Source of the DNA: Eutreptiella sp. 'Long Island Sound 2002'
Taxonomy: Eukaryota > Protista > Euglenida
Reading direction: 5' to 3'
Length of the DNA: 64,000 nt
Assembly (NCBI GenBank): GCA_964036045.1
Contig: OZ038379.1
Span: 23,994,001-24,058,000, forward strand
Below the pieces are notes generated by a model that did not search any database, was not told the origin of the DNA, and worked only from the letters and a program-made list of their open reading frames with translations. The translations under genes were made by a program, and so were the position numbers. Positions 6,801 through 62,430 of this stretch are shown here, piece after piece (the stretch's first letter is position 1; the number at the start of each line of letters is the position of its first letter).

Positions 6801-7017
6801 CACCGGGATAGATGCGTGTGGTCTCTTGGTAGCCTGACAATGTCGAGGATAGAATGTTGCTCCCTCCAACAGTTTGTGCGAGCTTCAGGGAAAAGGAGAA
6901 ATCAGACTCACCGATAATCAGGATGTAGTCAGTGTTACTGAATAGAGTATTCTTTGCGGGCTGCGGCCTCTTCGCAGGCGGTGCCCCTCGGTTGCCGGCA
7001 TCGAAGGACCTTTTCAT
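3815..7017 (-). CDS. DUF2431 / BMT5-like 25S rRNA (uridine-N3) methyltransferase-domain protein, spliced; 3' end uncertain
   Basis: Exons 7017-6777, 6701-6439, 4881-4793 and 3904-3815, all with GT-AG introns and matching phases. Family motifs: ILIIGESDFSFSL; NISALEKYGAVVNYDLDCT (after removing a 75-nt intron at 6776-6702); FDKIVFNFP; WDVKKQ|GADCPYIDLVETIPLPYPDFPTYSPK; SFTLAGSNLYVFELK. A donor at 3814 implies at least one further exon (candidate acceptor at 3760). Confidence 0.82.
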
Positions 7018-7165
7018 CTTCTGTCAGCGCAAAAGCGTGGGGTGGAGTACACATAATGTCTGGTCCCATTTTCGCATTCCCAAAAGCTTGCGGGACGTGC
7101 AAAGTGGAGTATACATAACGTCTGGTCCCTTTTTTGCATTCCCAAAAGCTTGCGGGACGTGCAAA
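7018..7165 (-). promoter_or_regulatory. Putative 3' splice / trans-splice acceptor just upstream of the ATG, with a 62-bp tandem duplication
   Basis: Minus strand reads ...ctccaccccacgcttttgcgctgacAG aag ATG (AG at 7022-7021). Two near-identical 62-bp units start at 7042 and 7104 (gtggagta..cataa..tctggtccc..gcattcccaaaagcttgcgggacgtgcaaa). The acceptor role is inferred. Confidence 0.4.
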
Positions 7166-42618: not shown

Positions 42619-44162
42619 CAGTGCCACTGCTCCAGGAAGAATATGATTATAAGAATATGCAGGCGACAAAAAATCCAAAAATTTTAAGAATATGTGCAGC
42701 CTAGGAATTTCGCCCGTATTCCATGATTTCATCAACTTGGCATGTGCATGAAACAAGAAGGTCACCCCTACCACCTCAAGGGCGGAGGTACCATGCTCCT
42801 TGTTTCATGCGACATTCACATCCAAAAAAATGCCAACACATGCTACATGCACATGCAAGAAATTGCCAACACATGTATGTCCAATAACTTCCAACTCTTG
42901 TGCGTTTCGTCCTCAAGGGGGAGTGCCTTGCAACAACACCCATTTTCCCTTTGGCCCATATTCCTCCAAGGGAGGCAATGCTTGTTACCACAACACCCCT
43001 TCAAAATTCAGGACATATTCACCCTTGTGGATGCCCGTGTGGTACAATTTTGAAAAACGGCCAATGTCCCACCCCACTTCGCGGCCGTAATCCAATGCAA
43101 TGCACAACTTGAGTTTTTTCAAGTTGTGCATTGCCATGTCCTCAGGGGGTTGGGGGACTATCTCAGCCCATGCGGGCTTCACGAAATGCCCTTGTTGGTC
43201 AACATTCACGGGCCCAAGCACATCCGAACCATCTGATGCCCCATCCGAATCAACCTCATCCACCTCATTCTCATCATCACCGCCTTCCTCTTCATTTGCA
43301 TCATCATCTTCCTCTTCATCTTCCTCCTCTTCATCTTCCTCCTCCAAATCACTTTCAGATGGAACATCACCACCATCATCCAAGCTGAAAGTGTACTCCT
43401 CCTCCAAACCTTGGAGCTTAATGTCCTTTTGGTTGGAGAGGTCTTTTGCCAAGCCTGAACCAGTTTTCAGGGCCAACCTGTCAAAATCCATCTTTGCACA
43501 CACGTGGTCCCAAGCATCGCCCAACCACTTTGTCAACAAAATCCTTTTTTCTGAAACAGGGACCTGTCCATTCACTATACGATCATTGTTATCCTCCTCC
43601 TCCAACCACTCATCATATGCCCTGTGCATGTGATTCTTACACATTCTTCCCACCCCTGCATCAATCACAGCAATCTCATCAGTGCATTCTGCTGGTTCTA
43701 AGTGCTGCTTTGTGTTGCACTTACGCCGCAGGAGGCGCCTGAATCGTGCAGTGGTCTGTGCTGACAAGTCGTCGGAAAACAGGCAAACCTCCTCTCGTTG
43801 GTTGATGGACTGCAAGAACGGCTTGAAAACCCGGAGGACCCACTCACATGCAATTTCTTCATTGACCCATGCCTTTTTCTGCCAAAACACTACAACTCTG
43901 TTGTCATACTGCCGAGTCTCTACTTTAGGGATTCTTTGCCCAGTGCCCTTGAACACAATCCCTGCCTTTGGCTGCACGCCCCCTTTGGGAATGAATCTGC
44001 AGCAAAGCTGCAGGCTGCAGTCCCTCTTAACATCAGTTCCACTGTTGGGGGGCAACCTGACCCGTGGACCATCCTCCTGACAGTGCAGTGTGACAGGGTC
44101 TTTATTTCCAAAATAGCAGGGCACTTGGTCCACATCATACCCAAGGAGGAGGGGGGCGCCCT
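42619..44162 (-). mobile_element. pogo/Tigger-family transposon, 3' half: DDE_1 catalytic domain, acidic linker, C-terminal barrel-like domain, TIR
   Basis: DDD motifs VDQVP, LFSDDLS and VIDAGV, plus QKKAWV. Open reading from ~44140 to 42985, with one premature TAA before the tail LPPLEEYGPKGKWVLL (ends 42913). TIR TA|CAGTGCCACTGCTCCAGGAAGAAT at 42617-42642 matches the reverse complement of 35551-35577 at 23/27 positions. Confidence 0.88.
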
Positions 44163-45482
44163 GATGTGACTGGTGACTCACAGGAAAGGGAAAGTGTGTG
44201 ATCATCGTGGGTGGCTGGCCTTGAAAAGATCGCCGACCTGTTGGGAGTGGCATCCCAGAAGGAAGGAGGCGTGGTCACTGGGTGCCTTCATGTGCGTGTG
44301 GTGGTACCACCGCAGTTTTCCGGACTTAGACGTGTGCGTGCGTGCGTGCGCGTGTGCGTGCGGCATCAGGAGGTGTGCATGCGTGCGCACGTTCGTGGGG
44401 GCATCAGGAGGATTTTACCCGATCAGCATGTGGTGCTGGAACGGTGTGGCGATTTATAGGCTATTTGTACCGTTGGATTGTGTAAGGGCGGAACAAGTGA
44501 TGTAGAGAGGGTCCATTCAAATTCATAGAAAATTCAACTATGAAGGTCTGGTCGGCTGAGGGATCAGTTGAACGGCCACATTCCGGATCGAAGGGGCTGG
44601 TCGAGGTGCTCCAAAAAAACACCTTTCGAGCGAGCGGTCAAGCAGGGGCGAGTGGCACCACGTTTCCGGGAACAAGGACATGACATCGGGTTTCAGCGGG
44701 TCGGGCACCTGCATACATCCCACGGGCGAAGGCTGCATCGCGAAGGAACTTCAGGTCAGGACTCAGGCGGGGGTGGGTCGGGCGGTCCTGAAGGAGGGTG
44801 ACACCAGAGGTCCCATGTTGAGGGGTGCGGTGTTGTTTTTTTTTGGAGCACCGTGGAAATGTCGACTGTCCTGTTCACAAGAGCCGGGGGCGGGGGCGGG
44901 CGACTGCCTTTGGTTCCTCGGAAGCGGCTGCGACGCTGGAGCGGTAGGCTGAGCGGACGATGTGGATGGCGGAACTGAAAGGAATGGGGTGAACGGTTCT
45001 TTAGGAGCGGGTAGGGGGGGGCGGGGGAGGGGGGGGTGAGTGCAAACCACAGGGGCATACGGGAAAAGCCCTCCATACACCACTCGTCCCAGCCCCCCGC
45101 ACTCCGTGAGCGTCACAATCCACTTCAGAAAGTCGCCCTTGGATGCCAATGCCATGGGAGCACGACGGGGTGCAGCTACTGCCCCCGGGCGGTGAGTGCG
45201 GGCTGCCCCGTACTGGCCCCCAGGGGATGGTCCCGGTTGCCTGTGGGGGATGGGGAGGACGCAATGCGCTGGTGTGCACCCGTACAAATACACGTGCAGT
45301 TGTCGGGTCGGATGAGACTGCATCGGCGCAGGCAGAGGGACGGTGCGGATGGATCCTCCGGCAGGGGCGGACCGCTGAGCCATGGCGCGGGTTGGGCGCT
45401 GCCGGGGCCTACCGCTCCCTGCCATCCGCCTTCCCTGCCCTCTTCCTGCCCGTGCGGTCCATGTGGGGGGTGTCAAAGGGCG

Positions 45483-48400
45483 TCACGCCACGCCCAACTC
45501 ACGAAGTTCGGCGTGCAGCTCCTGGCAAACGCGTTGCCGAATGGCAGCGGGCAACTGATCCAGGTACGCCCGCGCCAGCCTTTGACACCGCTGGCGACGG
45601 TGCGCGCTGAAGGCCTCCCAGGGTCGAGGGAACAGACCGTCCACCCCCTGCGGCCTCTCCCGGCAGCGGGCCACATGAGCGTGCGCATCGGACCCACAGT
45701 CCGCGCCACACCACGCGCAGAACGCGCAGGGGCACCTGCTGCATTTCAGGGCGCAGCAGCCATCGAAATCGATGTACGCCTGCCCGCACCGTGGGCAGTG
45801 GGCCGTGAGGACCTCCTCCACGAGATGCTTGCGCGCCTCCCCCGTCTTGCGCTGCTGTTCGTCCATCTGCCTCAGCTTCTCCAGTTCGGCGGCCACCATC
45901 TCTTGGAACCGCTTCTCGTGAGCCTCCACCAGCCGCTGCTCCATCATCCGGATCCGGACCTTCAGGTAGTCTTGGAATAGATCGGACGGCACATGCCCCG
46001 CCACCCGGTCATCCGCAAAGGCGCACCCCTCGCACTCCGACGGGAACTTGGGGCAATGCATCCGGCCCTCGCGCAGCTGCTGGACCCGGACGTCCTCCTT
46101 CAGGAAGGCCCTCACGCACTCCACAAAACAGGCGTCGCACACAAAGTGCGCCTCGCCGGCCGCGCCGCCGCACTCCACGCCCTGCGCCAGCGCGCAGGGC
46201 CGCGCCCCAAACTCGCACTGCTCACTGGACATGACGCAGCACTCCCGCTCGGCCGCGCTCTGCCAGGCAAACACCGGGGCGAAGAACGGGTCCTCCAACG
46301 CCGCGGCAGCCCTGGGCCTGGGCGCAGGCTCGTCGCTGCACAGCCGGTCCGCCAGCCGCGCCCCGTCCTCCTCCAAGCCGACCAGCCCGAGACCCTCCAG
46401 GACCTCCCCAAGGCACCTCAGCACCGCCCCAAGGCTGTACATGTCGCTGGCCGTCGTCGCCCCCGTGTGCAGGAGCTCGGGCGCCGCAAACCCGCGGCTG
46501 AACCCGACCCTCTGCGTGGTGGTGCAGATGTGCGTCACCGACGTCCGGACCGCCAGGTCCACGGCCACATCGAAGTCCGCCAGGCGCACCCGGCCCTTGG
46601 CACACACCAGCACGTTGGAGGGCTTGAGGTCGCTGTGGATGATCCCGATGCCGTGCAGGTGGGCCACTGCCTCGAAGAGCTGCAGTAGGGCGCGCCGCAC
46701 TGACACGGCGTCGGGCCGGCGCGCCGCCAGCCACTGGTCAATGGGCCCCTCGTCGTAATACGGCATCTGGAGGCAAAAAAAGTGGTGGTCGCAGTCGTGG
46801 AAAACCGCCACGACCTCCACGACGTGGGGGTGGGCGGCACGCACCAATCGGCCCGCCTCCTGCAGACATATCTTCAGTCCCCCCTCCGACACAGGGTAGC
46901 ACTTGATCGCAAACTGCTCGGTGCCCAGCGCCGCCTTGTACACTACGTTGCGTGAATGGGTGCCCAGGGGCTGTCTATCATCAAAGTGGTCCAGCCGTCG
47001 GTCCGCTTTCCACAAATGGAGGATGGCCTGCGGGATGCCCAGCCCCATGTACCCCACAACCTCCGGAAACTCGGCCTCGATCTGTGCAACGGCCTTTGTG
47101 GCATCCGTCAGAGCAGACTGCCGTTGCCGCACCGTTCGCTTGGCTGTCTCGAGTGTCTCGACGAGGTCCTCGGTGGGTCTGCCACGGCGCTCGGCGCGTC
47201 TCAACGCAGCCTTTGCATCATCGAACTCCTCTTGGGCATCCAGCAAAGCCTCTTTGGAATCGGCCAGGGCCTTCAGAGGGCCGTCACGCCTTTGTGCATC
47301 CACACCGGGCTTCAGAGCGGCGATCTCCTTCTCCCACCTCTCCAAATGTGGCTCACATGTCTGAGTCAAGAAGGCAATCTCCTGCCGGTATGCAGCCAAT
47401 TCCTTCTGAGACCCCCGCAGAAGGACCTCTGCGGGAAAAAGCGCGACCGGGTCGAACTCCCTTCGATGCCTCAGCTCAGCCTCCATCGCCCCATCTGCCT
47501 CCACCATCAGCCGTCGCAAGCTCTCCATGCCATCCAGCGTCTCGCATGGGATGTCCCTCCGCGGAGGCAGCGCAAAGCAGTCGCACGTGCGCAGCGCGAG
47601 CTGCACAGCCTTCAAAGCCTCATCAGTGGCGTTTGCAATGGCTTCATTGGAACAGTGCTTGACCCACGAGTCATATGCATCAACAACCTTTTGCAGATGG
47701 ATCCCCGGGCACACCTCGAGCCCTTCCGCAGTGGGAGACTGCCAGTGGACTTCAAGATGTGAGCCATGGATCCAAACACTCCGCCGCCCACTGTGAAGAG
47801 CCTCCTGCTCCCATTGCCCGTTCTCAGGGTCCGTGGCACAGCCAAAAACGTGCCACTGACTCCCAAGGCGTGGGCCTATGTCACTCCTGGATGAAGCGCA
47901 CTCGGATACGGCGCTTTGCAACTCGCGCTGCATCTGCTCCAGACGTTGTATGCGCTGCCGTATGCGACCAACCGCCCGCTGGCCCAGGTCATCATTGGCC
48001 TGCGCGACTGAACGTGACACCAGTCCTGCCCCCTGGACAAAATCGCAACGGATCTCCTGCACCTTCCGCCACAGGTCTGCACGGCAGCGATCGCGGCCTC
48101 GCACTAATCCATCGATTGCTTCCTCGACATCGGCAACCGAGGATTTCGGAGGCATTTCCGCCGCTCTTTGGCGGATGCTGCTTTGTTTGCGGGAGAGGCT
48201 CTCACGGTGCCTTTGGAGCTCCATTTCCAATGGCTCGGGGCTCAGAATACGTACCCTATCAGCCCTCAAGGGTACGGCGCACCTTAACCTGTCCACCAAT
48301 GTTAAGAAAGCTGCAGGTATGCCCTGGAGCATGGCACCACCGTCTTGGGGACGCTGTTGTACAACGTCATGGAACTTCCGGTGCAGATGGAACACGGACT

Positions 48401-48484
48401 CTGATGCGGGCACATACCCCCCAGGGATGGTCTGTACTCCTTGTTCAGCAGTGCAGGGGCACGCAAGGCCCTGCATGGGCTCTC
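45483..48484 (-). CDS. Large terminal exon: coiled coil + protein kinase + RING1 + Rcat/RING2 (RBR-like E3 ligase)
   Basis: About 1000 codons open. Kinase motifs FAIK, QEAG, HSDLKPSN, DFD, GFAAPE and DMYSLG. RING1-like C..C..HFVCDAC..CPKFPSEC. Rcat-like CPRCGQAYIDFDGCCALKCSRCPCAFCAWC. Phase-1 acceptor catctgcttttAG|GA at 48486-48485 (alternative at 48441-48440); first ATG at 48476. Confidence 0.9.
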
Positions 48485-48928
48485 CTAAAAGCAGATGGTG
48501 CGAACCATGTAAGGCACAAGGGGGACCCAGGAGTCTAGCCCAGCATGGGCCTGTACCACGAGCACAGGACACCCCAAACAGTCCAGTCCACAACCCCACC
48601 CCAAAACCCGGATACTTGTGACTGGTGCTTGTGCCAGCCGGTCGGGGGGGGGGGGGGTTCCTGCCGGGGGTCAGGGGTCGGGGGGGGGGTTCCTGCCGGG
48701 GGTCGGGGGGGGGTCTGGCCGGGGGGTCAGGGGGGGCGTCCAGCCAGGGGTGAGGAGGGGGGGGTTAGGGTTAGGGTTAAGGGTAGGGTTAGGGTTGGCC
48801 CTAGGGTTAGGGTTAGGGTTAGGGGTTAGGTAGGGGTTAGGAGTTAGGGTTAGGGTCACCGAGCTGGTGGAACCAGTCTTGGTTTTATAACCCTTTTTAG
48901 TGTCTAGGGTGGACCTAACAGGTTTAGC

Positions 48929-48959
<31 letters not shown>

Positions 48960-51900
48960 GCAAGCAAGCAGCACGCGCGAAATGGGCCAAAATCAGAACT
49001 CCGTCGTGGTGCTTTGGATTTGGTTGAAATTTTGGTGCATGATACCTATGGGTGTGAAGTACAATCACACAAAGTTTGAGCAGGAAACTCGACAGTGGCG
49101 GCTGAGAACGGGCGTCGCAAGTGGCGGACCTCAGTTTCAAAAACTGCAGTGTAGGGCCAAAAACAGCCATTTTTGGGCCAAAAAAGCCGTGGAACACATT
49201 CAAAACCGCCAAACGAAGGGAAACGGTGGGTACACTCCACGTGCGGCTTGACTTCCCCGTGTCAACGAGCTCTTTGCGGCCTTCTAACTCCATGATATGT
49301 CCCGGAAACGGCCCAAAAAGGCCCCCAAAAGCTCCAAATGCCGACAGCCACAAACCAAGAATAGGCCATATCTTTGGCTACATGGCTCAAAATGCGATTC
49401 CGAGGGCACCTACTCCACCCGCAACCCCCCACTTTTTGTGGTTTCCACCCCTCAGAATTGCCCAAACGGACGCCTACACCCCAATACCTAGGCCCACTAG
49501 GCTGCAGCAAGCTGCAAGCTCAAGCCCAAACAAGTGGGTGCCCAAATGGGTCAACAGGGTCCAGTAGGGGCAAAAAGATGACTTTTCTCAAAAATGATCC
49601 TACACCATGTGCGACGCTAAAACAAGTGTTTTTGGACCGTTTTGAGCTTGTGGTGGCCCATTATGGTCCTCCGAAAATCCCAAAATGCCTTGAAAATGGG
49701 CTATTTTGGGACCAAAACTGGGTCAAAAATGGGTCAAAAACACATTTTTCCAAATGTCATCCTACACCATTTGGGGTGCACAAACGGGTGAAATGAGCCC
49801 ATTTTGAGCCCATTTTGGGGCATTTTGGCCCCTCACAAGTCCAAAAAGCCTTGAAAGTGGGCCTCGTGGTGATGGGGTTCACTTGCAAGCTAATTTCACT
49901 TTGTCAAGAGCCATGAATGTGTGAATCATTCTTGATGCCCCTCACCAATCATAGTTGATGTTCCCTCCCCCACCAGCTCGGTCCCAATATTTAGTCTTGA
50001 TTAGGGCTAGGGTTGCTGTTAGGGCTTGCAGCCCTCCTGTAGCCCTCCTTCAGGTCAAAAATTTTTCTTGTTGTTTCAACACAAATATGAATTATCTACA
50101 AAATTTTGAGTATTTTGAGTATGAACACATAGTATGAAAAAAAAATTGGCGCCTTCGGCGCCGGACAGTTTTCTCTAGGGACACTTGTTGAGGGCCGACC
50201 CGGCACCACTATCTTTCAAAACCCGGGGGGGGGGGCTGGGGGGGGGTCGCATACAAGGACCCGGCCCGGCTGCCCCCCCGGGGTGCCAGCAGAGAAGGGG
50301 GGCTGTAGGGACTGAGGGGGGCTGCAGGGAGGGTGCAGGGGGTGTAGGGACAATGCAGCGGGGCTGTAGGGGGGGCTGTACAGGAAGGGGGGCGCAGAAG
50401 AGGGCTGTAGGGGGGACTGTGGGAGCGGCTGCAGGGCGGAGGTACAGGGCCTGCAGGGGGGACTGTAGGGGGCAGGGGGGGGGGGCAGAAGAGGGCTGTA
50501 CGGGGGACTGTGGGAGGGGCTGCAGGGCGGAGGTACAGGGGCTGCAGGGGGGGCTGTAGGGGGGCTGTAGAGGAGGTTCCAAGGGGTCTCCAGGGGTCTC
50601 CAGGGGTCTGCAGGGGGGCTGCGGGGGGTTGTATGGTTGTGGGCATATACAATGACATCACATTACAATTGTGCTCGCAATGAATCCAAACTGCCTTCGC
50701 CCACCGGCTGGGGCCCCATCCTGCATGGCAGTGCGTTTGGGTATTGTGTTGCAACTGAACTGCTGCAGCGATGCTCCATTGGGGTGGCGTGACGGAACCC
50801 AGCGACTTTTGTGGTGCAATCCCAAAGGGTAGCCCAAGCCCCTAGCGCCCCTCAAACAGCGTCCTCATTCAGCCCTTATGGCACCCCCTGGCTACCACCG
50901 ATAAATTCATCCGCATCGGGGGAAACTTATGTGACCGAGAACATGGCATAATGACAGGGTACAGGCCATGAAGGCACATGAGCACATGGAGCTGTGCCAA
51001 AGGCCTGGGGCCACACATGACATGCAGCACCTCCGTTTGCCAACGAGGGCCTGGCAGCCGCACGCCATAGCGACCACGACAACACAAAAAGAAAGAGCAG
51101 CAACCCAAGGGTCGGTTGCAGGACACGCTTCATCGGTTTGACGACTCGTGTCTGTTGCGTGACGAGGGGGTCTCGTGAACGTCGCCTGCACAGCGCCCTG
51201 TCGTTTCACTACGCCCCCCCCCCCCCCCTGCGTCGCCATGACGAATGTGCCCGAACTTCGGAGTCCCAGTGTCGCTACGCTGAGGCAAAGCCCTTCTTGA
51301 GACATGCAAGGGCACCCCCACAGTAGGCGAGCCCAACCATCACAGCGCCTGCGCTCCGGATTGTGACGATACCATTGGGATGGCTGATGAACGATTCTTC
51401 TGAATCACCCCCGACCCCACCCCACGCACACACCCTCACTGGGCACTGGCACAGTGGTACGCCTGAGGTCTGTGGGGCCCACGCACTCTCAAATGGGACA
51501 AGGCTGCACTGCCCCCCTCCGAAAGGGGAAGGGGGTGTGAAGAAGCGGATGGCGGAGTTTGGGGCAGGGCTGGGGCCACAGGGGCTGTGCCATTCAACCG
51601 CCTCCGTGCCCGTGGGGATGGGACAGCACCTGATATTGCCTGCACCACCGACAGCGCAGGTGACACTGCCCACAACCCTGGTCCGTCTGTTTCCTTCCAA
51701 GTCTTTGCCAGAGTCGGCAGTGGCAACTCCGTTTCTGCAGAATGTGCCAAGCCCTTATCATTGTTTTCGGCCTTGGAGGCGTTATTACTGACCGACCAAG
51801 ACCCGTTTTGTTTCACATAGCGCAGGTACTTGTCCGGGTCGGACCTCTTTTGGTACAGAACGTGATCATTGTACAACTCGTCCACAGGCACATACACGCC

Positions 51901-54900
51901 GTTGATCACTGACGCATTTGGCCCCTTGGCGCCTGAAAGAGGGAGGGGCAGGGGCAGGGCAGCGAGACACGGCATCGCACTCCGTGTGTGTGTGCCATTG
52001 ATCAGGGGGGGGTCTCTCCGCCCGGCGTTTGGGGCTCCGTCCCGCACGGCCTCCCGCTGCCTTTGGGGCGTGCGTTTCACTTCAACGGCTGCAGTGCCCC
52101 TCCGTTTGGGCGGCGTGACGTGACCCCGGGCCTGTGGTGGTGCTCAGCCCCTGGAAGCGCTGCGATTCGGGAATGCCCTGCTGTCGCTCGGGGGCCGGGC
52201 AGGTACTCTGGCGGTCACGTCATATGGACCCGATCCGCCCAGTGGCAGCCCCCGTGACCTGACGTGTATCAGTACTTGGGAGGGTGCTCGGGGGGGGGGG
52301 GGGGGCTCGGCAGGTTTCCCCGTATCGGTACCGGTCCAGCCTTCCATCGTGAGGGCGGCAGTGCCCTCCCCCCCCCGCCCACCGCCAGCAACGCGTCGCA
52401 GCGTTCAATGAGGTGTGCTGGTGGTAGGGCCCTACAGAAACGCAAAGCCCAAAAAAGCCTTCGTCATGTCTGGACTCTGCTGCATCGATGACTCCCTCCG
52501 CCTCAGGCCCATTGATGTGAGCAATGCCCCGCGCACTGCCTGGGGATCGGACGTCAATATCCTGACCACAAAACCACGGCGCATTGCGTTGCAAGTGTGA
52601 CCAAACTCGACCCGTGACCAAATGGTATGTGACAAAGATGGGCCACATGGTGACGGGCGCGGACCACATGTTCTGGGAACTGCCAAAAGATGGCGCCGGA
52701 TACACAATGCTGAGCACACGACACCGCACATGCCGTGCAATGCACACGGTACGCAGTGGAATGCCTTGCGATGTGTAGACCATTGTTCACATGTATGCAC
52801 CCCCCTCCCCGGCCGCATGATCACGTGTATGTGACACGCCCCCCTGTAAGGCATGTTGACCCTAAGTCCATGGAATCCACTGACTGCTTACCCCTCTCGG
52901 GTACACAGCACGTACGAGGCGCACAGCTCGCAGGCCACATCTCTCTGGGACATCTGTTATACGCCAACGCGGAGCAAATTCGCACTTTTTCGGGGGTTTC
53001 TCAAGTTTTGATCCCATGCACCAAAAATACGTTCCCCAAGGGGGGGGGGGGGGTAGGTGGTCACATGTTTGAGCACAGAGCTGCAAATGGGATGATGCAC
53101 AGGATGGAGCAATGCTCAATGGACCAGCGAATAGACTGAATCCAAGTCATCCAAGTCAACGGCAAATGCACCTCGCCAGAAATTCGGGCTGGGAAACCTT
53201 GTGGGGGTGCTCTTTGTGATCCCAAAAATGGGCTGCAAAAGCAGTGGCCTCAGCAGTGGATAAAATCTGGTGTTCCTTGTGGGGGCATGCAGGTTGCTGT
53301 GAACCGGTTGTACGAGGCTTTTTGGCCTGCCTGCCAGGCTCCTGGGTCACCTTCACCCAATCTGCGTCCCCAGAGCGTGCTCTTTTGCGCACCAAAAGTT
53401 TCTGTGGCGCATCGGGTGAAGCAACAGCGTGAATTTGTATGCGGACATGGTAGCTGCCTGTTGACAAAAAGAGGCAGCAAGCAACACAGGCACTGTCCAA
53501 AACGGACGAAAACCTCAAACATATCGTCAGCACAGCATGCAGACCCAGGGTGTTCCAAATAGCCCTTTTTAATGGCTTTCCCACTACACCACACATAACC
53601 CCCCCCCCTGTGGGACACTCAGGGGGCACAAATGAGGCAACAACGGCACCAACCCCTGAAAAAGCTCCGTGTTGGCGTAAAATCCGACGACCCCAAGAGA
53701 TATGTAGTGCCGCTCAGCCGCTCAACCGCCACCATTTTGGAGGTCCCCCCTCCACAAATCCCTGTGGCACATCTTCTGGAGAATGACATCAGGAGCTCAA
53801 ACACATCCTTCCAATGGGATGTAAGGGGCACCGCTCATTTCCTGAACAGCACGACCAGCCTCACGGCCCCACTCACACAGCGGCAGCAGGGGTCCTGTGC
53901 ATCCCTCAGGAACACCTGCCGACCCCCCCCCCCCCCAGCGGTGCATGCATGTAGCATCATGTCAGGGTACAGGCCGTGGAGGAGGGACAGGCCGTGCCAC
54001 AGGCCTGGGGCCACACACACACACACACACACACACACATGACATGCAGCACCTCCGCTTGCCAACGAGGGCCTGGCGGCCGCACGCCATGGCGGCCACG
54101 ACAACGCACAAAGGAAGAGCCACAGAACAAAGACGCAAATGGGTCGCTTGCAGGACACGCTTCATCGACGTGACGACTGGTGTCTGGTGCCCGTGGGGGG
54201 GCGGACTACAACCGGTCCTGATGCGAGACCTCCCCCAGCTATCTGTCAAAACTTGCGGGGGGGGGGGGGGGGGTCGGCGGGAGGGTGGGGGGGGGGGGGG
54301 GGGGGGGCTGCACGCAACCCACTACCACCACATGCATACCTCAAGGGGGTGTGTGTGTCTGGGGCATGGGGGTATGGAGGTATGTATGGGATAATAGCCA
54401 TAGTCTTTGCCAGGAAGAAAGTCTTAAGGGTCGTAAGGACGAAAGGCATAGTACCCCTCTCAACTGAGCATGGGACAAAAAATGGCACCCACACCGCTAT
54501 CTTTCAAAACGCGGGGGGTGGGGGGGGGGTGGGGTGTGTCGCAGGACCGGGCCCGGCCGCCCCCCCCCCCGGGGTCTGGTGCGTGACGAGGGAGTCTCGT
54601 GAACGTCGCCTGCACAGCGCCCTGTCGTGTCAGTACGCCGGTCCCCCCTTATACGTCGCCGTGACAAAAGGCCCATTTATGTCACCAATGCCCGTGCCTG
54701 GGGATTGGACGTCAGTATCCTGACCACAAAACCACGGCGCATGCCGTGCAATGCACACGGTACGCAGTGGAATACCTTGCGTTCTGTAGACCATTGTTCA
54801 CATGTATGCACCCCCCCCACCCACCCCCCAACCACGTGTATGTGCACACCCCCCTTCAAGGTATGTTGACCCCCGTCCCAAAAAAATATGTGTATGGCCC

Positions 54901-57547
54901 CCCCGCCCAGGCCATATGTAGTACCGCTCAGGCATCAACCGCCAAGGTTTTAAAGGGTTCCCTCCACAAAACCCTGTGGCACATCTTCTGGAGAATGACA
55001 TCAGGAGCTCAAACGCATCCTTCCAATGGGATGTGAGGGGCACCGCTCACAAGGCACACGGTTTCCTGAACAGCACGACCAGCCTCACCAGCTCGACCAG
55101 CCGCATGCCATAGCGACCACGACAACACAAAAAGAAAGAGCAGCAACCCAAGGGTCATTTGCAGGACACGCTTCATCGGTTTGACGACTCGTGTCTGGTG
55201 CGTGACGAGGGGGTCTCGTGAACGTCGCCTGCACAGCGCCCCGTCGTTTCACTACGCCCCCCCCCCCCTGCGTCGCCATGACGAATGTGCCCGAACTTCG
55301 GAGTCCCAGTGTCGCTGCGCTGAGGCAAAGCCCTTCTTGAGACATGCAAGGGCACCCCCACAGTAGGCGAGCCCAACCACCACAGCGCCTGCGCTCCGGA
55401 TTGTGACGATACCATTGGGATGGCTGATGAACGATTCTTCTGAATCACCCCCGGCCCCACCCCACGCACACACCCTCACTGGGCACTGGCACAGTGGTAC
55501 GCCTGAGGTCTGTGGGGCCCGCGCACTCTCAAATGGGACAAGGCTGCACTGCCCCCCTCCGAAAGGGGAAGGGGGTGTGAAGAAGCGGATGGCGGAGTTT
55601 GGGGCAGGGCTGGGGCCACAGGGGCTGTGCCATTCAACCGCCTCCGTGCCCGTGGGGATGGGACAGCACCTGATATTACAACGGCCGTGGCCTGTACCAC
55701 CGACATCGCAGGTGATACCGCAAATATCGTTCCGTCTGCTTCCTTCCACGTCTTTGCCAGAGTCGGCAGTGGCAAAAACGTTTCTGCACAATGTGCCTTG
55801 CCCGTTTTGTTGTTTGCGTCCTTGTCGGTGCTACGACTGACCGACCAATAGCCGTTTTGTTTCACATAGCGCAGGTACCAGTCCGGGTCAGATCTCTTTT
55901 GGTACAGAACATGATCATTGTACACCTCGTCCACAGGCACATACACGCCGTTGATCACTGACGCATTTGGCCCCTTGGCGCCTGAAAGAGGGAGGGGCAG
56001 GGGCAGGGCAGCGAGACACGGCATCGCACTCCGTGTGTGTGTGCCATTGATCAGGGGGGGGTCTCTCCGCCCGGCGTTTGGGGCTCCGTCCCGCACGGCC
56101 TCCCGCTGCCTTTGGGGCGTGCGTTTCACTTCAACGGCTGCAGTGCCCCTCCGTTTGGGCGGCGTGACGTGACCCCGGGCCTGTGGTGGTGCTCAGCCCC
56201 TGGAAGCGCTGCGATTCGGGAATGCCCTGCTGTCGCTCGGGGGCCGGGCAGGTACTCTGGCGGTCACGTCACATGGACCCGATCCGCCCAGTGGCAGCCC
56301 CCGTGACCTGACGTGTATCAGTACTTGGGAGGGTGCGCGGGGGGGGGGGGGGGTCGGCAGGTTTCCCCGTATCGTTACCGGTCCAGCCTTCCATCGCGAG
56401 GGCGGCGGTGCCCTCTCCCCCCCCCCACCCACCGCCAGCAACGCGTCACAGCGTTCAATGAGGTGTGCTGGTGGAAGGGCCCTACAGAAACGCAAACCCA
56501 AAAAGCCTTCGAGATGCACAGCTCGCACACCATATGTAGTACCGCTCAGCTTTCGCCGCCAGCGTTTGGGAGGTCCCCCTCCACAAAACCCTGTGGCACA
56601 TGTTCTGTAAGGGGGGCACCGCTCACGAGGCACACGGTTTCCTGAACAGCACAACGAGCCCCACGGCCCCACTCACACAGCGGCAGCAGGGGTCCTGTGC
56701 ATCCCTCAGGAACACCTGCCGAGCCCCCCCCCCCCCCCCCCCGGCGGTGCATGCATGCAGCATCATGTCAGGGTACAGGCCGTGGAGGAGGGACAGGCCG
56801 TGCCACAGGCCTGGGGCCACACACACACACACACACACATACGACATGCAGCACCTCCGTTTGCCAACGAGGGCCTGGCAGCCACACGCCATGGCGACCA
56901 CGACAACGCACAAAGGAAGAGCACCAACACAAGGGTCGGTTGCAGGACATGTGTCTGTTGCTTCACGACATGCGGGAACCCGAACACTGATGACCCAGCC
57001 CAACCACCAAAAGACCCCAGGGGCAGATGCGGGGCTGCAGTGACAACACACCGCCACGCTGACATACAGCCCATCTCTAGTCCACCAATCAACCCCACCG
57101 CCCTGTGGTCTGGTCATTGGGCCCCAAATGGCGCTGTCTGCGGCAGAGTCGGGTGTTCAAAGGAAAAAGGCCCACCGTCCGGTACACCCCACCGCAAGAC
57201 GTTGAAGATAGTTGACACTTGGTACAAAAAAGACAGTGGCTGTAGGTCCACAAATGGCAGTTTGCGGGTAACCGACAGCTGCCGGTTAACCGGCGGCGGT
57301 TTGCAAATACCCAGCGTCAGGCCATCGTCCGTGGCTGGGTAAGCGTTGGCGCTGTGGCGAAAATTGTTAAAACCCCGAAAAAAAAAGAAAATGCCATGGA
57401 TTGCGGCACCGGCTGAGGAAGAATGGGGTATATGTTCTGGCGAGTCTGGGTTGCTGTCTGCGTCTGCGGAGGCGGCACCTGTGATCACAACGCATTCCGT
57501 CGGATCCACCAGCGGCATGCTCTCACCGTGTAAGAGGCATTCGGGTG
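45483..57547 (-). CDS. Inferred spliced gene: [small exon]-[variable repeat domain]x2-kinase-RBR-like; 5' end not found
   Basis: Exons 57547-57479 (69 nt), 55981-55670 (312 nt), 51932-51630 (303 nt) and 48484-45483 all have phase-1 boundaries and GT-AG introns. The joins read VVIT-G-AKGPNASVINGVYVP..., VVIS-G-AKGPNAS... and IS-G-EPMQ...IPGGYVPASE, the last echoing INGVYVPVDE. Confidence 0.6.
48765..48855 (+). repeat. Interstitial telomere-like (TTAGGG)n tract, degenerate
   Basis: About 14 perfect or variant TTAGGG units, preceded by G-run repeats (gggggttcctgccggggg) at ~48645-48730. Confidence 0.85.
48900..49900 (+). repeat. Interspersed non-coding repeat element (caagcaagc head), intronic
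   Basis: Microsatellite head at 48928-48972; related to 22985-23300; no credible ORF. Confidence 0.5.
50290..50630. repeat. G-rich degenerate tandem repeat (gggggctg(c/t)aggg)
   Basis: Recurrent ggggctgtag / ggggctgcag units separated by G runs. Confidence 0.65.
51055..52463. repeat. Segmental duplication unit A (paralogous to 55097-56511)
   Basis: Near-identical flanks around a diverged exon; offset ~4040-4049 bp. Confidence 0.92.
51630..51932 (-). CDS. Repeat-domain exon A (unnamed ~100-aa, probably beta-rich domain)
   Basis: Acceptor ccctctttcAG|GC; donor TCA G|GTGCTG; 303 nt, no stops: AKGPNASVINGVYVPVDELYNDHVLYQKRSDPDKYLRYVKQNGSWSVS...WKETDGPGLWAVSPALSVVQAIS. Confidence 0.75.
55097..56511. 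repeat. Segmental duplication unit B (paralogous to 51055-52463)
   Basis: About 6 substitutions in ~500 bp on one side of the exon and about 2 in ~350 bp on the other, relative to unit A. Confidence 0.92.
55670..55981 (-). CDS. Repeat-domain exon B (paralog of exon A)
   Basis: Same splice sites as exon A; 312 nt, no stops: AKGPNASVINGVYVPVDEVYNDHVLYQKRSDPDWYLRYVKQNGYWSVSRSTDKDANNKTGKAHC...IFAVSPAMSVVQATAVVIS. Confidence 0.75.
57479..57547 (-). CDS. Small phase 1-1 exon supplying the first strand (VVITG) of the repeat domain
   Basis: Acceptor tgtcctcctcaAG|CA; donor ACA G|GTGCCG; encodes (A)PECLLHGESMPLVDPTECVVIT(G). Confidence 0.55.
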
Positions 57548-60500
57548 CTTGAGGAGGACAAAGGCACACACAGAAACGGGGCCTGAAAGGCGGCACCATT
57601 CGTAGGAGCACAGGGCACGTGTCCAGGCTCAGGCACAGTCCTGTGGGCTGTGTGCAGCCCTGGACCCTCGGCTGCCGTTATGCTGCCGTCGTCCTAGCAA
57701 CCCCCGCCCCCCGCCCCCCTTATCCCACACACAGGTCCATAGGCCTTCAACACTGTGTCTGCTGCAAAAGGCAGGCACCTGCATTGAGACATTGTTTCCA
57801 GTGCCCCCACACCTCACACCGGGGCCTGTGAAACATATGCTGTGTTCTCGCCCCCACCGCCAATTTGCACCACAACACCGGGCACAGGGGGGCGCTTCAG
57901 CTCAGTTCCAGACCCCAACCCCTGCAGCGTGGCCAAAGGGGTCCAGAGGGAATGAAATGTCGGATACATAGCTACCATGTGCCCCCGCGTCACAGGCATT
58001 CGGTCATCGCCAATCAGTTCTGAATGCTGCCGTGAGTTCGCCATCTGGCGATCGAATGTTTCATCGTCTGGTCGGGTGAGAGGTGTGGTCGCTTGTCAGG
58101 AGAGGGGTCCAAAGGGGAAGGGTTCAAAAATTTCTCAGGTTTTTGGGGCATTTTTGAATTCCACGTGTCATTCTGAGCATTTTGAATGGACGCAAGTCGG
58201 GCAAAAATTTCTGTTACCATTCATCAAAAATGAATAATGGTATTGTATTCTGGCAGGCGCACAATTGGACAAGCAAAGGCATCACAAGCACCAAGGTAAG
58301 ACACAAGGCAACATGGACGACTGCAATTTGATACATCCCATTGTTTGCATGTGGTCCTTGTCCCCTCCACCGTCCATCCATATGCACAACTACATATATA
58401 AAGACATATGAATGTATGTTTATGAACAACGAAGTGAGGCACCGAAAAAAATGTTTGGCAATGCCATACACCAGCCTACACTACATGTGTCGATCTATTA
58501 TCATTCACTTGAGTTACGCAAAACTCAACAAAAACTATTCCCCGGAGAGAAAAATTTCAAACTCAAGACGCAACAAGGAAGGATGCCCAATTGACCACAG
58601 ACTGCGCAGGTGGTTTTGCTGAAGCAAACAGGTATCCACCGGGTACCATATTGCACTGCTGGATGTTGTACAGTCTTGCCGCACATCCCAGACAAGTGAC
58701 CCTCAGATGCACGCAGCATCGCAGTGCAGCCCCCCCCCCCCCTGTAGCTCTCGTAAACCCTCTCAATGTCCACAGGGATTTCTTTGGGGGGGGGGGGTGG
58801 CGGACGGGGGGGGGGGGGGGGCAAACGCCTCGGTCGTGCCTCCGCATGACTTTTCACCCGGTGTCCGCATCGTTCTTTGGCGGGTCCACACCGACGGGAG
58901 GCGGGACAACAGCCGTGGATCACAGGGCTGAGGGTCGGTGGGTGACGGGCAGCGGGTCCTGGCGACCAATGTCACCCACTTTGTCAGGAAGGACCAGCAC
59001 TTGTCAGGAAGGCTAAAGATACGTGGCGTGCCGTCGCCCGCCATTCATTGATGCCCCCCCTCCCCCAAACATCGGTCACGGGCTTCAAGTTCTCGGCTGG
59101 GAATCCATGGAAATGGTGTGCCGTCGTCTTGGTGTTGCGTGTTGCAGGACACGGGATCAAGCACTGGCTCAATGAAATCAACAAAAAATCAACTGCACCA
59201 CTATTTCAGAACTAGCCAGCGACCGTTGTTGGCGCTCTTGAGTTTTGCTATTGGAAACAGGAGGCATACTGGAGACCTTGAGCCCAGCTCCCAAACCCTG
59301 GTCCCACGCATGCGATGTGACTTTGTTCCGTGCGATTTTATTTTTTGCGCGATTTCATTTTTTGCCTGCGTCAAATACAACATGGGCCACACCGTTCTTC
59401 CTCTCCTTGCTGAGGCTAGTGATAATGACAGTCTTGGGGCAGGGGGGAAGACTCTGCTGATTGGGGCCGATGGGGCTCTGGGCAAAGGGTTCTCTGAGAG
59501 GAGGGCAAACAATGCGGGTGCCACAGCACATGACGTGCGAAGAAGGAGTGCGGGCTTCCTCTGTCTTCTTGGCATGTTTGCTGGGCGTTGGGCAGAGGGG
59601 AATCAAGTGTGCGACTTTGGGGGCGTTTTCGCACAGCGCAGGGACAGCGCGGGCACAGCGCCAATTATTACGTTGTTTATTCCAGGAACACCCCCTGCAC
59701 ACCACCCCCCCTACAGAAGCGTGCATGATCCATTCAAAACAGCCTCGGGGGTGCTGAGTTCAGGACCCTGGGACCCGTGGCTACCGGCGGTGGAAAACAG
59801 CCGACTTTTTGCACAGCGTGCGGTGTGCCCCCTTTCTTGCCCCCGGGTGTCATGCAATCCTGCATGCGTGACTGTGTTTTGTTTGCGGGGTTGTGACTGG
59901 GGCGGGGTTTATCTCATTTTGTGGACTGTGGCACGAACCGATGGCATACAGCCTCATGGGGCCGTCTCAATGGGGAAAGCAACTTCAGGGTGCACTTGGT
60001 CCCACGTTCTGGGTCCATATTGGGGTACCCCTGGCGTCAAAGAGACACATGGCCGCATGAGCCCTGCTGGATTGGGGGGCCCAAAGCGGGCGATTCTCGT
60101 CCCGCGAACAGAAAAGGCCTCAAGGGGATGATGCACGAAGTAGACGTGACACGCTGCTACACGGGCTCTATGTGGGCATGCCTTTGTGGTGTCGGACCCC
60201 CCCCCCCCAAAGCCACGCCCCCCCACCGGCCCATGTCACATCCTCACCTAATGACCCACAACATACCACATCAACCCTCAGTCAAGATATACACCAACAT
60301 CCAACCCCATCCCCGGCACTGCACTCCCACCGCGCGGGGGGCCATGAGGCATGTAGCACTTGGGGAGTTTTTGGGTCCCCACTCCGTAGGGTTTTGTGCG
60401 GACAGAGTGGGACGAGTATTTCTAACCTCCACGGCTGCCCAGGGGCGCGTGACCTCACCGTGGTGTGGGGGTGAAACCGGGGGGGGGTCCCCCCCGGGCT

Positions 60501-61024
60501 AACACGCAATCTGGGGGGTGACCTGGTCCAGCCGCGGCGGCCAGGGCACGGGATCGCACGCCCCACCCCTCGCCGGCCACCGTGGGAGAGTCACGATGGC
60601 ACAGGGCGGGCTCCACCGGGGGGTGGCGGTATGCAGGAGTAACCCGGGTCCCCCTGTGACCCAGCCCTCTCCAGGGCTCGTGTGCGCTCCCCTACCCCAA
60701 CCCACTGCACCTTGTGTTTTGCACAGGTACATCATGGGGTGGGGATCTCGTCCTATCCGACGGGACCGGAGCTGGGAGGCGGTGGAATAAAGGGGAGACA
60801 GCGCCGGGGCGGAGGTAAGGGCCAGCGCCTGCCGCTACGGTGCTCACTGCGCCGGGGTAATGGCACCTGCCTGCAGCCTCGACGTCTGGCTCCCCAGGAA
60901 GTGCAGTGAAACAAGGGGAGGCCCCCCGTCCCTGGTCCTCCGCCCATGCAGGGGGGAGCGGCCTGCCTTGGCGACACAGTACTGAAATAAGGGATGCCCC
61001 CCCCGTCCCTGGTGGATCCCTGGT

Positions 61025-61490
61025 GAGAGACGATAATGAAACAAGGGGTGGCCCCCCAGAGACTGACAGGGGGGGCGCCAGCCCCCCCAAGAGCCCCTGT
61101 CGACCTGTGTCTTTGAGAGACGATCATGAAATAAGGGGTGCCCCCCCAGAGACTGACCAAGGGGGGCGCCAGCCCCCCCAGGAGCCCCTGTCGACCTGTG
61201 TTTTTGAGAGACGATCATGAAATAAGGGGAGGCCCCCCAGAGACGGACCAGGGGGGGCGCCAGCCCCCCCAGGAGCCCCTGTCGACCTGTGTCTTTGAGA
61301 GACGATCATGAAATAAGGGGTGGCCCCCCAGAGACTGACCAAGGGGGGCGCCAGCCCCCCCAGGAGCCCCTGTCGACGTGTGTTTTTGAGAGACGATCAT
61401 GAAATAAGGGGAGGCCCCCCAGAGACGGACCACGGGGGGCGCCAGCCCCCCCAGGAGCCCCTTTCGACCTGTGTTTTTGAGAGACGATCA
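61025..61490. repeat. 91-bp tandem repeat, ~5 copies (degenerate precursors back to ~60905)
   Basis: gagagacgatcatgaaataagggg occurs at 61115, 61206, 61297 and 61388 (partial at 61479; variant at 61025). Confidence 0.92.
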
Positions 61491-61492
61491 TG

Positions 61493-62430
61493 CCCCACAC
61501 AGCGGCGGTTACACCCGAGTTCCTCCGGTCCTGCCTGGGCCGCGGAGGGATAGGGACGCCCCGTGGGTGCATAAGGTATTCTCCCTCCCCACACAACGGC
61601 GGTTACACCCGAGTCCCTCCAGTCCAGCTTGGGCCGCGGAGGGATAGGGACGCCCCGTGGGTTCGTCAGGTATTTTTCCTTTCCCCACACAGCGGCGGTT
61701 ACACCCGAGTCCCTCCGGTCCAGCCTGGGCCACGGGGGGATAGGGACGCCCCGTGGGTCCATAAGGTATTCTTCCTTCCCCCAAACAGCGGCGGTTACAC
61801 CCGAGTCCCTCCAGTCCAGCTTGGGCCGCGGAGGGATAGGGACGCCCCGTGGGTTCGTCAGGTATTTTTCCTTTCCCCACACAGCGGCGGTTACACCCGA
61901 GTCCCTCCGGTCCAGCCTGGGCCACGGGGGGATAGGGACGCCCCGTGGGTCCATAAGGTATTCTTCCTTCCCCCACACAGCGGCGGTTACACCCGAGTCC
62001 CTCCGGTCCTGCCTAGGCCGCGGAGGGATAGGGACGCCCCGTGGGTTCGTCAGGTATTTTTCCTTTCCCCACACAGCGGCGGTTACACCCGAGTCCCTCC
62101 GGTCCAGCCTGGGCCGCGGGGGGATAGGGACGCCCCGTGGGTTCGTCAGGTATTTTTCCTTTCCCCACACAGCGGCGGTTACACCCGAGTCCCTCCGGTC
62201 CTGCCTAGGCCGCGGAGGGATAGGGACGCCCCGTTGGTCCATAAGGTATTCTTCCTTCCCCCACACAGCGGCGGTTACACCCGAGTCCCTCCGGTCCAGC
62301 CTGGGCCGCGGGGGGATAGGGACGCCCCGTGGGTTCGTGAGGTATTTTTCCTTTCCCCACACAGCGGCGGTTACACCCGAGTCCCTCCGGTCCAGCCTGG
62401 GCCGCGGGGGGATAGGGACGCCCCGTGGGA
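61493..62430. repeat. 96-bp tandem repeat, ~10 copies, two alternating variants
   Basis: acacagcggcggttacacccgagt recurs every 96 bp; tails alternate between gttcgtcaggtatttttccttt and gtccataaggtattcttcctt. Confidence 0.95.

What the first reader, a model, noticed from the sequence alone, without database searches (positions are those of the whole stretch)
51630..55981. Duplicated exons are far more diverged than their own introns: hypervariable cassette domain
Seen: exons A (51630-51932) and B (55670-55981) sit in a ~4.04-kb duplication. Their flanking introns differ by about 1% (hand count: ~6 substitutions in 500 bp and ~2 in 350 bp), while the exons differ at roughly 20 of 100 residues plus indels. 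Changes cluster in patches and often involve several bases of one codon (AAG>TGG K/W, GAG>TTT E/F, NNASKAENNDKGL vs RSTDKDANNKTGK). The scaffold (GPNASVINGVYVP, HVLYQKRSDPD, LPLPTLAKTWKE), reading frame and splice sites are untouched. Established: one-repeat-per-exon arrays with conserved introns and hypervariable residues are known in brown-algal (Ectocarpus) LRR-ROCO and NB-ARC-TPR candidate immune genes. Inference: this unnamed domain is a ligand-binding module under diversifying selection or targeted diversification, with introns homogenised by recombination.
Basis: partly seen in the sequence, partly recalled or inferred. Interest (0 to 1): 0.88.

Follow-up and report, generated by a model that had tools for sequence, protein, structure and literature searches.

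The report
Hypervariable domain exons, kinase gene
Two tandem copies of one exon in an algal kinase gene differ about twelve times more than the introns around them, because a fifth of their codons change amino acid very fast while recombination keeps the introns alike, as in immune-type recognition genes.

Summary
Minus-strand exons A (51630-51932) and B (55670-55981) are both phase 1-1 with AG/GT borders. They differ at 43 of 300 aligned bases plus indels; their flanking introns differ at 11 of 945 (Fisher p 2e-18). All differences lie in a 239-nt tract inside the exon, flanked by 346 and 156 identical bases.

Eight further copies come from four syntenic contigs (alleles or recent paralogs) carrying 1, at least 1, 2 and 4 copies. 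The exon exceeds its introns in all 45 pairs. Codon position 2 is the most variable, then 1, then 3. My own M1a/M2a test gives LRT 110, with omega about 11 at 21% of codons and about 0 at 48%. The base spectrum shows no targeted mutator. Recombination is abundant.

Exon silent divergence is also raised (A/B dS 0.175 against 0.012 in introns), so the exon cores are older lineages than their homogenised introns.

Metatranscriptome contigs match both exon cores exactly and splice A to the kinase exon.

The 100-aa domain folds confidently as an all-beta module. It has no Pfam, PDB or Swiss-Prot match, but 547 representative relatives. Ligand binding and surface clustering remain untested.

The scan noted this stretch once before (s1-216502).

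The parts
57479..57599 (-). First coding exon. In-frame ATG at 57599, with an alternative at 57518. It ends ...VDPTECVVITG with a GT donor after 57479. The 5' limit is unknown.
   Evidence: An RNA contig in X6 runs from the acceptor of exon A/B into 57482-57511. Frame and ATG.
55670..55981 (-). Variable domain exon B: 312 nt, phase 1-1. It is the most divergent copy of the ten.
   Evidence: An RNA contig covers 55746-55923 with 0 mismatches.
55111..56500 (-). Duplicated unit B: exon B plus its homogenised flanking intron sequence.
   Evidence: Alignment of the two units.
52451..55110 (.). Non-duplicated spacer inside the intron. It holds high-copy repeats (53171-53814, 54298-54619), a (CA)n tract and poly-G/C tracts.
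   Evidence: DNA-run word depth reaches 9586.
51068..52450 (-). Duplicated unit A: exon A plus its homogenised flanking intron sequence.
51630..51932 (-). Variable domain exon A: 303 nt, phase 1-1.
   Evidence: An RNA contig covers 51748-51916 with 0 mismatches. Contigs in X8 and X12 end at the donor and continue into the kinase exon.
51638..51876 (-). The tract that holds every A/B difference: 53 differing alignment columns.
48485..51629 (-). Intron between exon A and the last exon.
   Evidence: Loose ends at 51629 in X8 and X12 match 48454-48483.
45483..48484 (-). Last exon, about 1000 codons: helical region, protein kinase domain (about 46410-46973) and a Cys-rich C-terminal region.
   Evidence: ORF. 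Pkinase E 5e-28. The C-terminal region has no Pfam or PDB match. Against L004: dS 0.0127, omega 0.53.

Best explanation
Exons A and B each encode one copy of a roughly 100-residue all-beta domain. They sit at the N-terminus of a cytoplasmic protein of about 1245 aa: short leader, variable domains, helical region, protein kinase, Cys-rich tail.

The locus is highly polymorphic and varies in copy number (1, at least 1, 2, 2 and 4 domain exons on five syntenic sequences). About a fifth of the domain's codons are under strong diversifying or balancing selection for amino-acid change. These are concentrated in residues 42-63, with further sites at 5, 8, 34, 81 and 86-88. About half of the codons are frozen.

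Unequal crossing-over and gene conversion between tandem units and between alleles keep the introns near the background divergence of about 1-5%. Exchanges that would erase the differences in the exon core are not retained. The exon cores therefore persist as old lineages embedded in young introns.

Shown: the divergence contrast, the codon-level signal, recombination, copy-number variation, transcription, and splicing of exon A to the kinase exon.

Inferred: that the variable residues form a recognition surface and that the protein is a sensor coupled to a kinase.
For: - Exon divergence exceeds intron divergence in all 45 pairs of 10 copies, by 1.1-12 fold.
- For A/B the odds ratio is 14, p 2e-18.
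- Nucleotide diversity: position 2 0.141, position 1 0.095, position 3 0.070, introns 0.039-0.049 over the full flanks and mostly 0.01-0.03 in the 50-nt bins of the first 300 nt.
- At least 73 nonsynonymous against 17 synonymous changes. Hypervariable codons have 3-6 amino-acid states, mostly with a constant third base.
- Codon ML: M0 omega 1.9; M2a against M1a LRT 109.9, p 1e-24; omega2 11.5 at 21% of codons, omega0 about 0 at 48%; 17 sites with posterior above 0.9.
- Control, same gene and same haplotype pair: kinase exon dS 0.0127, dN 0.0067.
- Upstream and downstream intron relationships are discordant; Rm is 23 per unit.
- The loci are syntenic and vary in copy number.
- No base-specific mutation bias.
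- RNA contigs and splice junctions.
- In-frame gene model without a transmembrane segment.
- The same columns vary more between sister repeats in 28 other family proteins: 0.40 against 0.24, p 3e-4.
- Confident fold, pLDDT 87.
- Relatives carry kinase, PARP and FYVE by Pfam here; TIR, WWE and calpain appear in the names of AlphaFold DB structural matches.
Against: - Whole-exon dN/dS is only 0.8-4.2, and 0.78 for A/B.
- Silent sites inside the exon are about 3 times more polymorphic than the adjoining introns (7/33 against 44/596, p 0.0125). A locally raised mutation or exchange rate is therefore not excluded.
- The site-model test is my own implementation on one tree. Recombination inflates such tests.
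- There are only 10 copies, and alleles cannot be told from paralogs.
- No coordinates were available to test surface clustering.
- No binding partner is known.
- No transcript was seen that joins B to A.
Confidence: 0.62

Rival explanations
1. Old exon lineages are protected from homogenisation, without positive selection. This is the L/M-opsin type. Gene conversion homogenises the introns, and purifying selection merely preserves two functionally distinct domains. The excess exon divergence reflects age only.
For: For A/B, dS 0.175 is at least as high as dN 0.135, and both far exceed intron divergence of 0.012. This is the same relation reported for gibbon L/M opsin exons (PMC3213168). A-position copies wA, L2 and L4b cluster and share the short 'AIS' ending.
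Against: In opsins dN is at most dS. Here most pairs have dN above dS, position 2 is the most variable, codons show 4-6 amino-acid states among 10 copies, and M2a is strongly preferred. Alleles at the same position also differ by 3-14% in the exon against 0.4-5.6% in introns.
Confidence: 0.15
2. An exon-confined diversification mechanism is at work. Candidates are short templated conversion patches, conversion from spliced cDNA, or a local mutator. It would raise change inside the exon regardless of coding effect, and selection would then filter the outcome.
For: The divergent tract lies wholly inside the exon with perfectly identical flanks. Silent exon sites are about 3 times more polymorphic than adjacent introns. 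L001 copies 2 and 3 have 0/947 intron differences but a two-base change in the most variable codon. Many codons carry multi-base changes.
Against: Variable sites are equally frequent at A, C, G and T majority bases, and ts:tv is 49:54. There is no adenine-specific or deaminase-like signature. No third or template copy is in the window. No near-identical donors outside this locus appeared among 5.8 billion proteins. The conserved blocks inside the exon are almost invariant, which a region-wide mutator would not spare at silent sites.
Confidence: 0.1
3. A and B are mutually exclusive alternative exons, as in Dscam. Each transcript would carry one of them, so they diverge as alternative isoform modules.
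For: The exons have the same phase and similar length and lie in tandem. No B-to-A junction was seen, and the exon-1 junction contig fits either acceptor.
Against: Both lengths are multiples of 3, so joint inclusion keeps the frame. Relatives from other organisms carry 2-12 tandem copies of the domain in one protein. Haplotypes with 1 to 4 copies exist. This rival concerns splicing only and does not by itself explain omega well above 1.
Confidence: 0.1
4. The pattern is an assembly or alignment artefact, or comes from decaying pseudo-exons.
For: The comparison contigs come from a mixed-coverage assembly. Poly-G/C tracts break many contigs nearby.
Against: All 10 copies keep an open frame and their splice sites. 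About half of the codons are frozen. Independent RNA contigs match both exon cores exactly and show splicing.
Confidence: 0.02

Closest known systems
Ectocarpus ROCO-LRR and NB-ARC-TPR candidate receptors (PMC3341825)
   Same: One repeat unit per exon, exons that can be added or removed in frame, positive selection at a subset of residues, and an intracellular architecture with a signalling domain. It is also an algal example.
   Different: Here the unit is a roughly 100-residue all-beta domain with no Pfam model, not a 24-residue LRR or a TPR. The introns are phase 1, not phase 0. The signalling part is a protein kinase, not ROC-COR or NB-ARC. There are only 1-4 units.
Fungal HNWD NLRs (het-d, het-e) with highly conserved WD40 repeats (PMC12222747)
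   Same: Near-identical repeats are maintained by concerted evolution or unequal crossing-over. A few sites are hypervariable under diversifying selection, and repeat number is polymorphic between alleles.
   Different: The fungal repeats are not split by introns. Their sensor is a WD40 propeller attached to a NACHT domain, and their role in allorecognition has been shown experimentally.
Primate L/M opsin tandem duplicates (PMC3213168)
   Same: Exons are more divergent than introns. Intron divergence lies below both exon dS and exon dN, because gene conversion homogenises the introns and selection opposes it in the exons.
   Different: In opsins dN is at most dS, so a few tuning sites are preserved by purifying selection. 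Here dN is at least dS, with omega about 11 at a fifth of the codons and many amino-acid states per site.
MHC peptide-binding-region exons (established knowledge; not tested against a paper here)
   Same: Diversity is concentrated in one exon, dN exceeds dS at contact codons, silent diversity is raised in that exon, and flanking introns are homogenised by recombination.
   Different: The fold, the architecture and the organism differ. Whether these sequences are long-lived alleles is not established.

Membership tests
One-repeat-per-exon LRR/TPR receptor arrays (Ectocarpus type) | The repeat is an LRR or a TPR | tested here: not met
   No Pfam family at E up to 10 for either exon, and none shared by the 89 family members. 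The model is an all-beta domain of 100 residues.
One-repeat-per-exon LRR/TPR receptor arrays (Ectocarpus type) | One unit per symmetric exon, so units can be gained or lost in frame | tested here: met
   All 10 exons are 300-315 nt, phase 1-1, with AG/GT borders. Haplotypes carry 1, at least 1, 2, 2 and 4 units.
One-repeat-per-exon LRR/TPR receptor arrays (Ectocarpus type) | A ROC-COR or NB-ARC signalling domain | tested here: not met
   Pfam finds only protein kinase families in the 1038-aa ORF.
Diversity-generating retroelement | Variable positions correspond to adenines of a template repeat next to a reverse transcriptase | tested here: not met
   The variable fraction is 0.28, 0.24, 0.26 and 0.28 for A, C, G and T majority bases. 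Only 50 of 78 variable sites include an A. There is no third copy in the window.
Mutually exclusive exon cluster (Dscam type) | Each transcript contains exactly one exon of the cluster | tested here: inconclusive
   RNA contigs show exon 1 joined to an A or B acceptor, and A joined to the kinase exon. No contig spans B to A or B to the kinase exon.
Exon-over-intron divergence through intron homogenisation (opsin/MHC pattern) | Intron divergence is below both the synonymous and the nonsynonymous divergence of the exon | tested here: met
   A/B: intron 0.012, dS 0.175, dN 0.135. 4-fold sites against introns, p 0.0125.
Genes under diversifying selection (site-class test) | A codon class with omega above 1 is significantly supported | tested here: met
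   M2a against M1a LRT 109.9. This is my own implementation on a single tree with recombination not modelled.
Protein kinase (PF00069) | Match above the Pfam gathering score | tested here: met
   98.6 bits against a cut-off of 31.7, residues 543-730 of the ORF.
   No Pfam family at E up to 10 for the last 305 residues. No PDB relative with E below 0.04. Cys-x2-Cys motifs are visible by eye only.

The most novel reading that the evidence does not exclude
The locus is an algal self/non-self or pathogen-recognition gene. Its sensor would be a previously undescribed beta-domain, diversified by an exon-confined exchange process such as short templated patches or conversion from spliced cDNA. This would give MHC-like allelic lineages embedded in young introns, and a new class of variable intracellular receptor kinase shared by many protists.
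Probability: 0.12. Interest if true: 0.85.

Novelty: new variant of a known kind. Interest (0 to 1): 0.62.

Why it matters
Fast-evolving recognition genes are well described in animals, plants, fungi and brown algae. They are hardly described in unicellular marine algae, whose main enemies are viruses and parasites. This locus gives a concrete and testable candidate: a transcribed kinase gene whose N-terminal domains carry an MHC-like signature of selection and vary in number between haplotypes.

The domain has no Pfam model and no solved relative. Even so, it has hundreds of representative relatives. Some of those relatives also carry kinase, PARP and FYVE domains (Pfam), and structural matches in AlphaFold DB are named for TIR, WWE and calpain domains. 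Defining this domain could therefore annotate a large set of 'hypothetical' protist proteins and point to an innate-immunity-like toolkit.

Tried and rejected
- Pfam on the exons, on 89 family members and on the C-terminal region: nothing.
- PDB by sequence profile: nothing meaningful.
- Foldseek against PDB: E above 1.
- VIA-align wide search: best Z 5.2, below the noise guide.
- Swiss-Prot models: nothing.
- Search for further copies in the window by tblastn: only A and B.
- Near relatives among 5.8 billion proteins: only the 9 read-through ORFs of this locus and its variants.
- DGR-like or deaminase-like mutagenesis: rejected on the base spectrum.
- Artefact or pseudo-exon: rejected on RNA matches and intact frames.
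- RBR ligase label for the C-terminus: not confirmed.
- Mapping selected sites on a 3-D surface was not possible, because the model's coordinates are not exposed. Only secondary-structure placement could be given.
- The organism's name is coded in the tools and was not pursued.

Full report
**The observation**

On the minus strand, 51630-51932 (A, 303 nt) and 55670-55981 (B, 312 nt) are open reading segments. Each is bounded by an AG acceptor and a GT donor and is in phase 1-1. They encode 78%-identical copies of one domain.

The repeat period is 4040-4049 nt. Only about 1.4 kb is truly duplicated: 51068-52450 and 55111-56500. The remainder is a spacer full of high-copy repeats.

A and B differ at 43 of 300 aligned exon bases plus 12 gap columns. 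The 398 nt upstream differ at 3 sites and the 547 nt downstream at 8. Fisher odds ratio is 14, p 1.7e-18. Every difference lies between 51638 and 51876. That tract is flanked by 346 nt and 156 nt of perfect identity.

**More copies**

Read-through ORFs of the same exon occur on four other contigs of one public assembly. These contigs are syntenic with the window. The upstream region is 93-99% identical, and where the last (kinase) exon is present on a contig it is 93-99% identical too. They carry different numbers of the exon:
- L002: one copy on the syntenic stretch (it lacks unit B; the contig ends just after the copy)
- L003: at least one copy (the contig ends)
- L004: two copies
- L001: four copies

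Whether these are alleles or recent segmental paralogs cannot be decided here. All ten exons are 300-315 nt, in phase 1-1, with intact splice sites.

**Exon against intron across the set**

In all 45 pairs the exon is more diverged than its flanks, by 1.1-12 fold. Copies at the same position in different haplotypes show the same contrast. For example, wB against the L003 copy has exon divergence 14.4% against introns of 2.3% and 0.4%.

Nucleotide diversity by class:
- codon position 2: 0.141
- codon position 1: 0.095
- codon position 3: 0.070
- introns: 0.049 (upstream) and 0.039 (downstream) over the full flanks, and mostly 0.01-0.03 in the 50-nt bins of the 300 nt next to the exon

This is the reverse of the order expected under purifying selection.

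At least 73 nonsynonymous and 17 synonymous changes are needed to explain the alignment. About 20 codons have 3-6 amino-acid states among ten sequences, usually with a constant third base. Blocks such as INGVYVPVDELYNDHVLYQKRSDPD and LPLPTLAKTW are invariant or nearly so, even at the nucleotide level.

**Codon models**

Pairwise Nei-Gojobori dN/dS for the whole exon ranges from 0.8 to 4.2. For A/B it is 0.78, with dS 0.175 and dN 0.135.

I wrote a GY94/F3x4 likelihood implementation and ran it on an IQ-TREE topology:
- M0 gives omega 1.9.
- lnL is -1169.5 for M1a and -1114.6 for M2a. LRT is 109.9, p 1e-24.
- Under M2a, 48% of codons have omega about 0, 31% have omega 1, and 21% have omega 11.5.
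- 17 sites have posterior above 0.9. In exon A residue numbers these are 5, 8, 34, 42, 44, 46, 49, 52, 55, 58, 59, 61, 63, 81, 86, 87 and 88.

Two caveats apply. The code is my own, and it uses a single tree. Recombination is clearly present and is known to inflate such tests.

A control that needs no tree points the same way. Between the window and L004, the kinase exon of the same gene has dS 0.0127 and dN 0.0067 over 990 codons. The variable exons of that haplotype pair have dN of 0.105 (A against the second L004 copy) and 0.176 (B against the first).

**Recombination and mutation spectrum**

Upstream and downstream introns give conflicting relationships. For example, the first L001 copy is 1% from wA/wB upstream but groups with the other L001 copies downstream. 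The four-gamete test gives Rm 23 over the 1.25-kb unit, of which 8 lie inside the exon.

Variable sites are equally frequent whatever the majority base: A 0.28, C 0.24, G 0.26, T 0.28. Transitions to transversions are 49:54. This argues against adenine-directed (DGR-like) or deaminase-like mutagenesis. No template-like third copy exists in the window.

**A nuance that remains open**

Silent sites inside the exon are also more variable than the adjoining introns. Among 4-fold sites of invariant codons, 7 of 33 are segregating, against 44 of 596 intron sites (p 0.0125). The A/B dS is about 15 times the intron divergence.

The simplest reading is that the exon cores are old lineages and the introns around them have been homogenised. 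The same relation is reported for primate L/M opsin duplicates (PMC3213168). There, however, dN does not exceed dS.

The drop in diversity at the exon edge is sharp. Two L001 copies are otherwise identical (0 of 947 intron differences) yet differ by a two-base change in the most variable codon. Together these leave room for an exon-confined exchange process, which I cannot exclude.

**Transcription and gene model**

In estuary metatranscriptomes:
- Contigs match the variable cores of A (51748-51916) and B (55746-55923) without mismatch.
- Two runs have contigs that stop at the donor of A and continue into 48454-48483. This places the acceptor at 48484, inside the long ORF.
- One contig runs from the shared start of A/B into 57482-57511, the end of an upstream exon.

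Joining exon 1, B, A and the last exon gives an uninterrupted 1245-codon frame without a transmembrane segment.

No contig spans B to A, so joint inclusion is not shown. It is likely, because relatives carry 2-12 tandem domains in one protein.

A DNA-like run of the labelled organism covers the introns but not the variable core of B at 95% identity. This is consistent with polymorphism.

**The domain**

- A profile of the ten copies finds 547 cluster representatives at E up to 1e-3. Many have several tandem copies.
- Two long relatives combine the repeats with FYVE, protein kinase and PARP domains.
- With an 89-sequence alignment, AlphaFold2 gives a confident all-beta model with pLDDT 87 and pTM 0.81.
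- There is no Pfam family, no solved relative by sequence or by fold, and no Swiss-Prot model.
- Matches are uncharacterised proteins in the AlphaFold DB clusters and in Atlas clusters labelled haptophyte, diatom, ciliate and cnidarian. These are fused to modules such as TIR, WWE, calpain, SRCR, fibrinogen-C, EGF and TSP1.
- The selected sites fall on the beta3-beta4 hairpin tip, alternate residues of strand 44-49, the short helix 50-55 and the following loop. Further sites are at 81 and 86-88.
- The same columns are more variable between sister repeats in 28 other family proteins: 0.40 against 0.24, p 3e-4.
- Surface clustering could not be tested, because coordinates are not exposed.

**Comparison with known systems**

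The behaviour matches known fast-evolving receptor repeats:
- Ectocarpus LRR/TPR exon arrays (PMC3341825).
- Fungal WD40 NLR sensors, which combine concerted evolution, hypervariable sites and repeat-number polymorphism (PMC12222747).

The locus is not a member of either family. It has no LRR, TPR or WD40 repeat and no NB-ARC, NACHT or ROC-COR domain.

**Verdict**

The best reading is diversifying or balancing selection on a recognition-type surface of a new domain, with introns homogenised by recombination and with copy-number variation. This is a new variant of a known kind. Its function as a sensor is inferred, not shown.

Noticed in passing
window 61024-64000: Three adjoining G+C-rich tandem arrays with periods of about 91 nt (61024-61521), 96 nt (61491-62558) and 49 nt (62328 to the window end, at least 29 copies). 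They have long open frames on both strands.
   Followed up: no
window 53171-53814 and 54298-54619: Segments of the A-B spacer reach word depths of 1000-9600 in a DNA-like run, against about 35 for the flanks. They are therefore very high-copy repeats. RNA libraries also cover 53332-53653.
   Followed up: no
window 52289-52310 (and 54240-54310, 56340-56355): Long poly-G/poly-C tracts at the edges of the duplicated units. Hundreds of DNA contigs break there, and many spurious joints start there.
   Followed up: no
L003:4262-6547 and L002:1-44: A reverse-transcriptase/RNase H ORF (761 aa; zf-RVT, RNase_H) lies a few kb upstream of the locus in these two haplotypes. It was not looked for at the matching place of the window.
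   Followed up: no
window 45486-46400 (-): The C-terminal 305 residues are rich in Cys-x2-Cys motifs but have no Pfam or PDB match.
   Followed up: partly
window 48639-50451: About 1.8 kb of the intron between exon A and the kinase exon has no match on L001 (an insertion or deletion between haplotypes). It includes a G-rich short-repeat block at 50387-50597.
   Followed up: no
window 55488-55637: An intron segment downstream of exon B appears as a 151-nt contig in an RNA library. This could be unspliced RNA or DNA carry-over.
   Followed up: no
window 42985-44253 (-): A 422-aa ORF with an acidic tail. It belongs to the pogo-like transposon region noted earlier (s1-216651).
   Followed up: no
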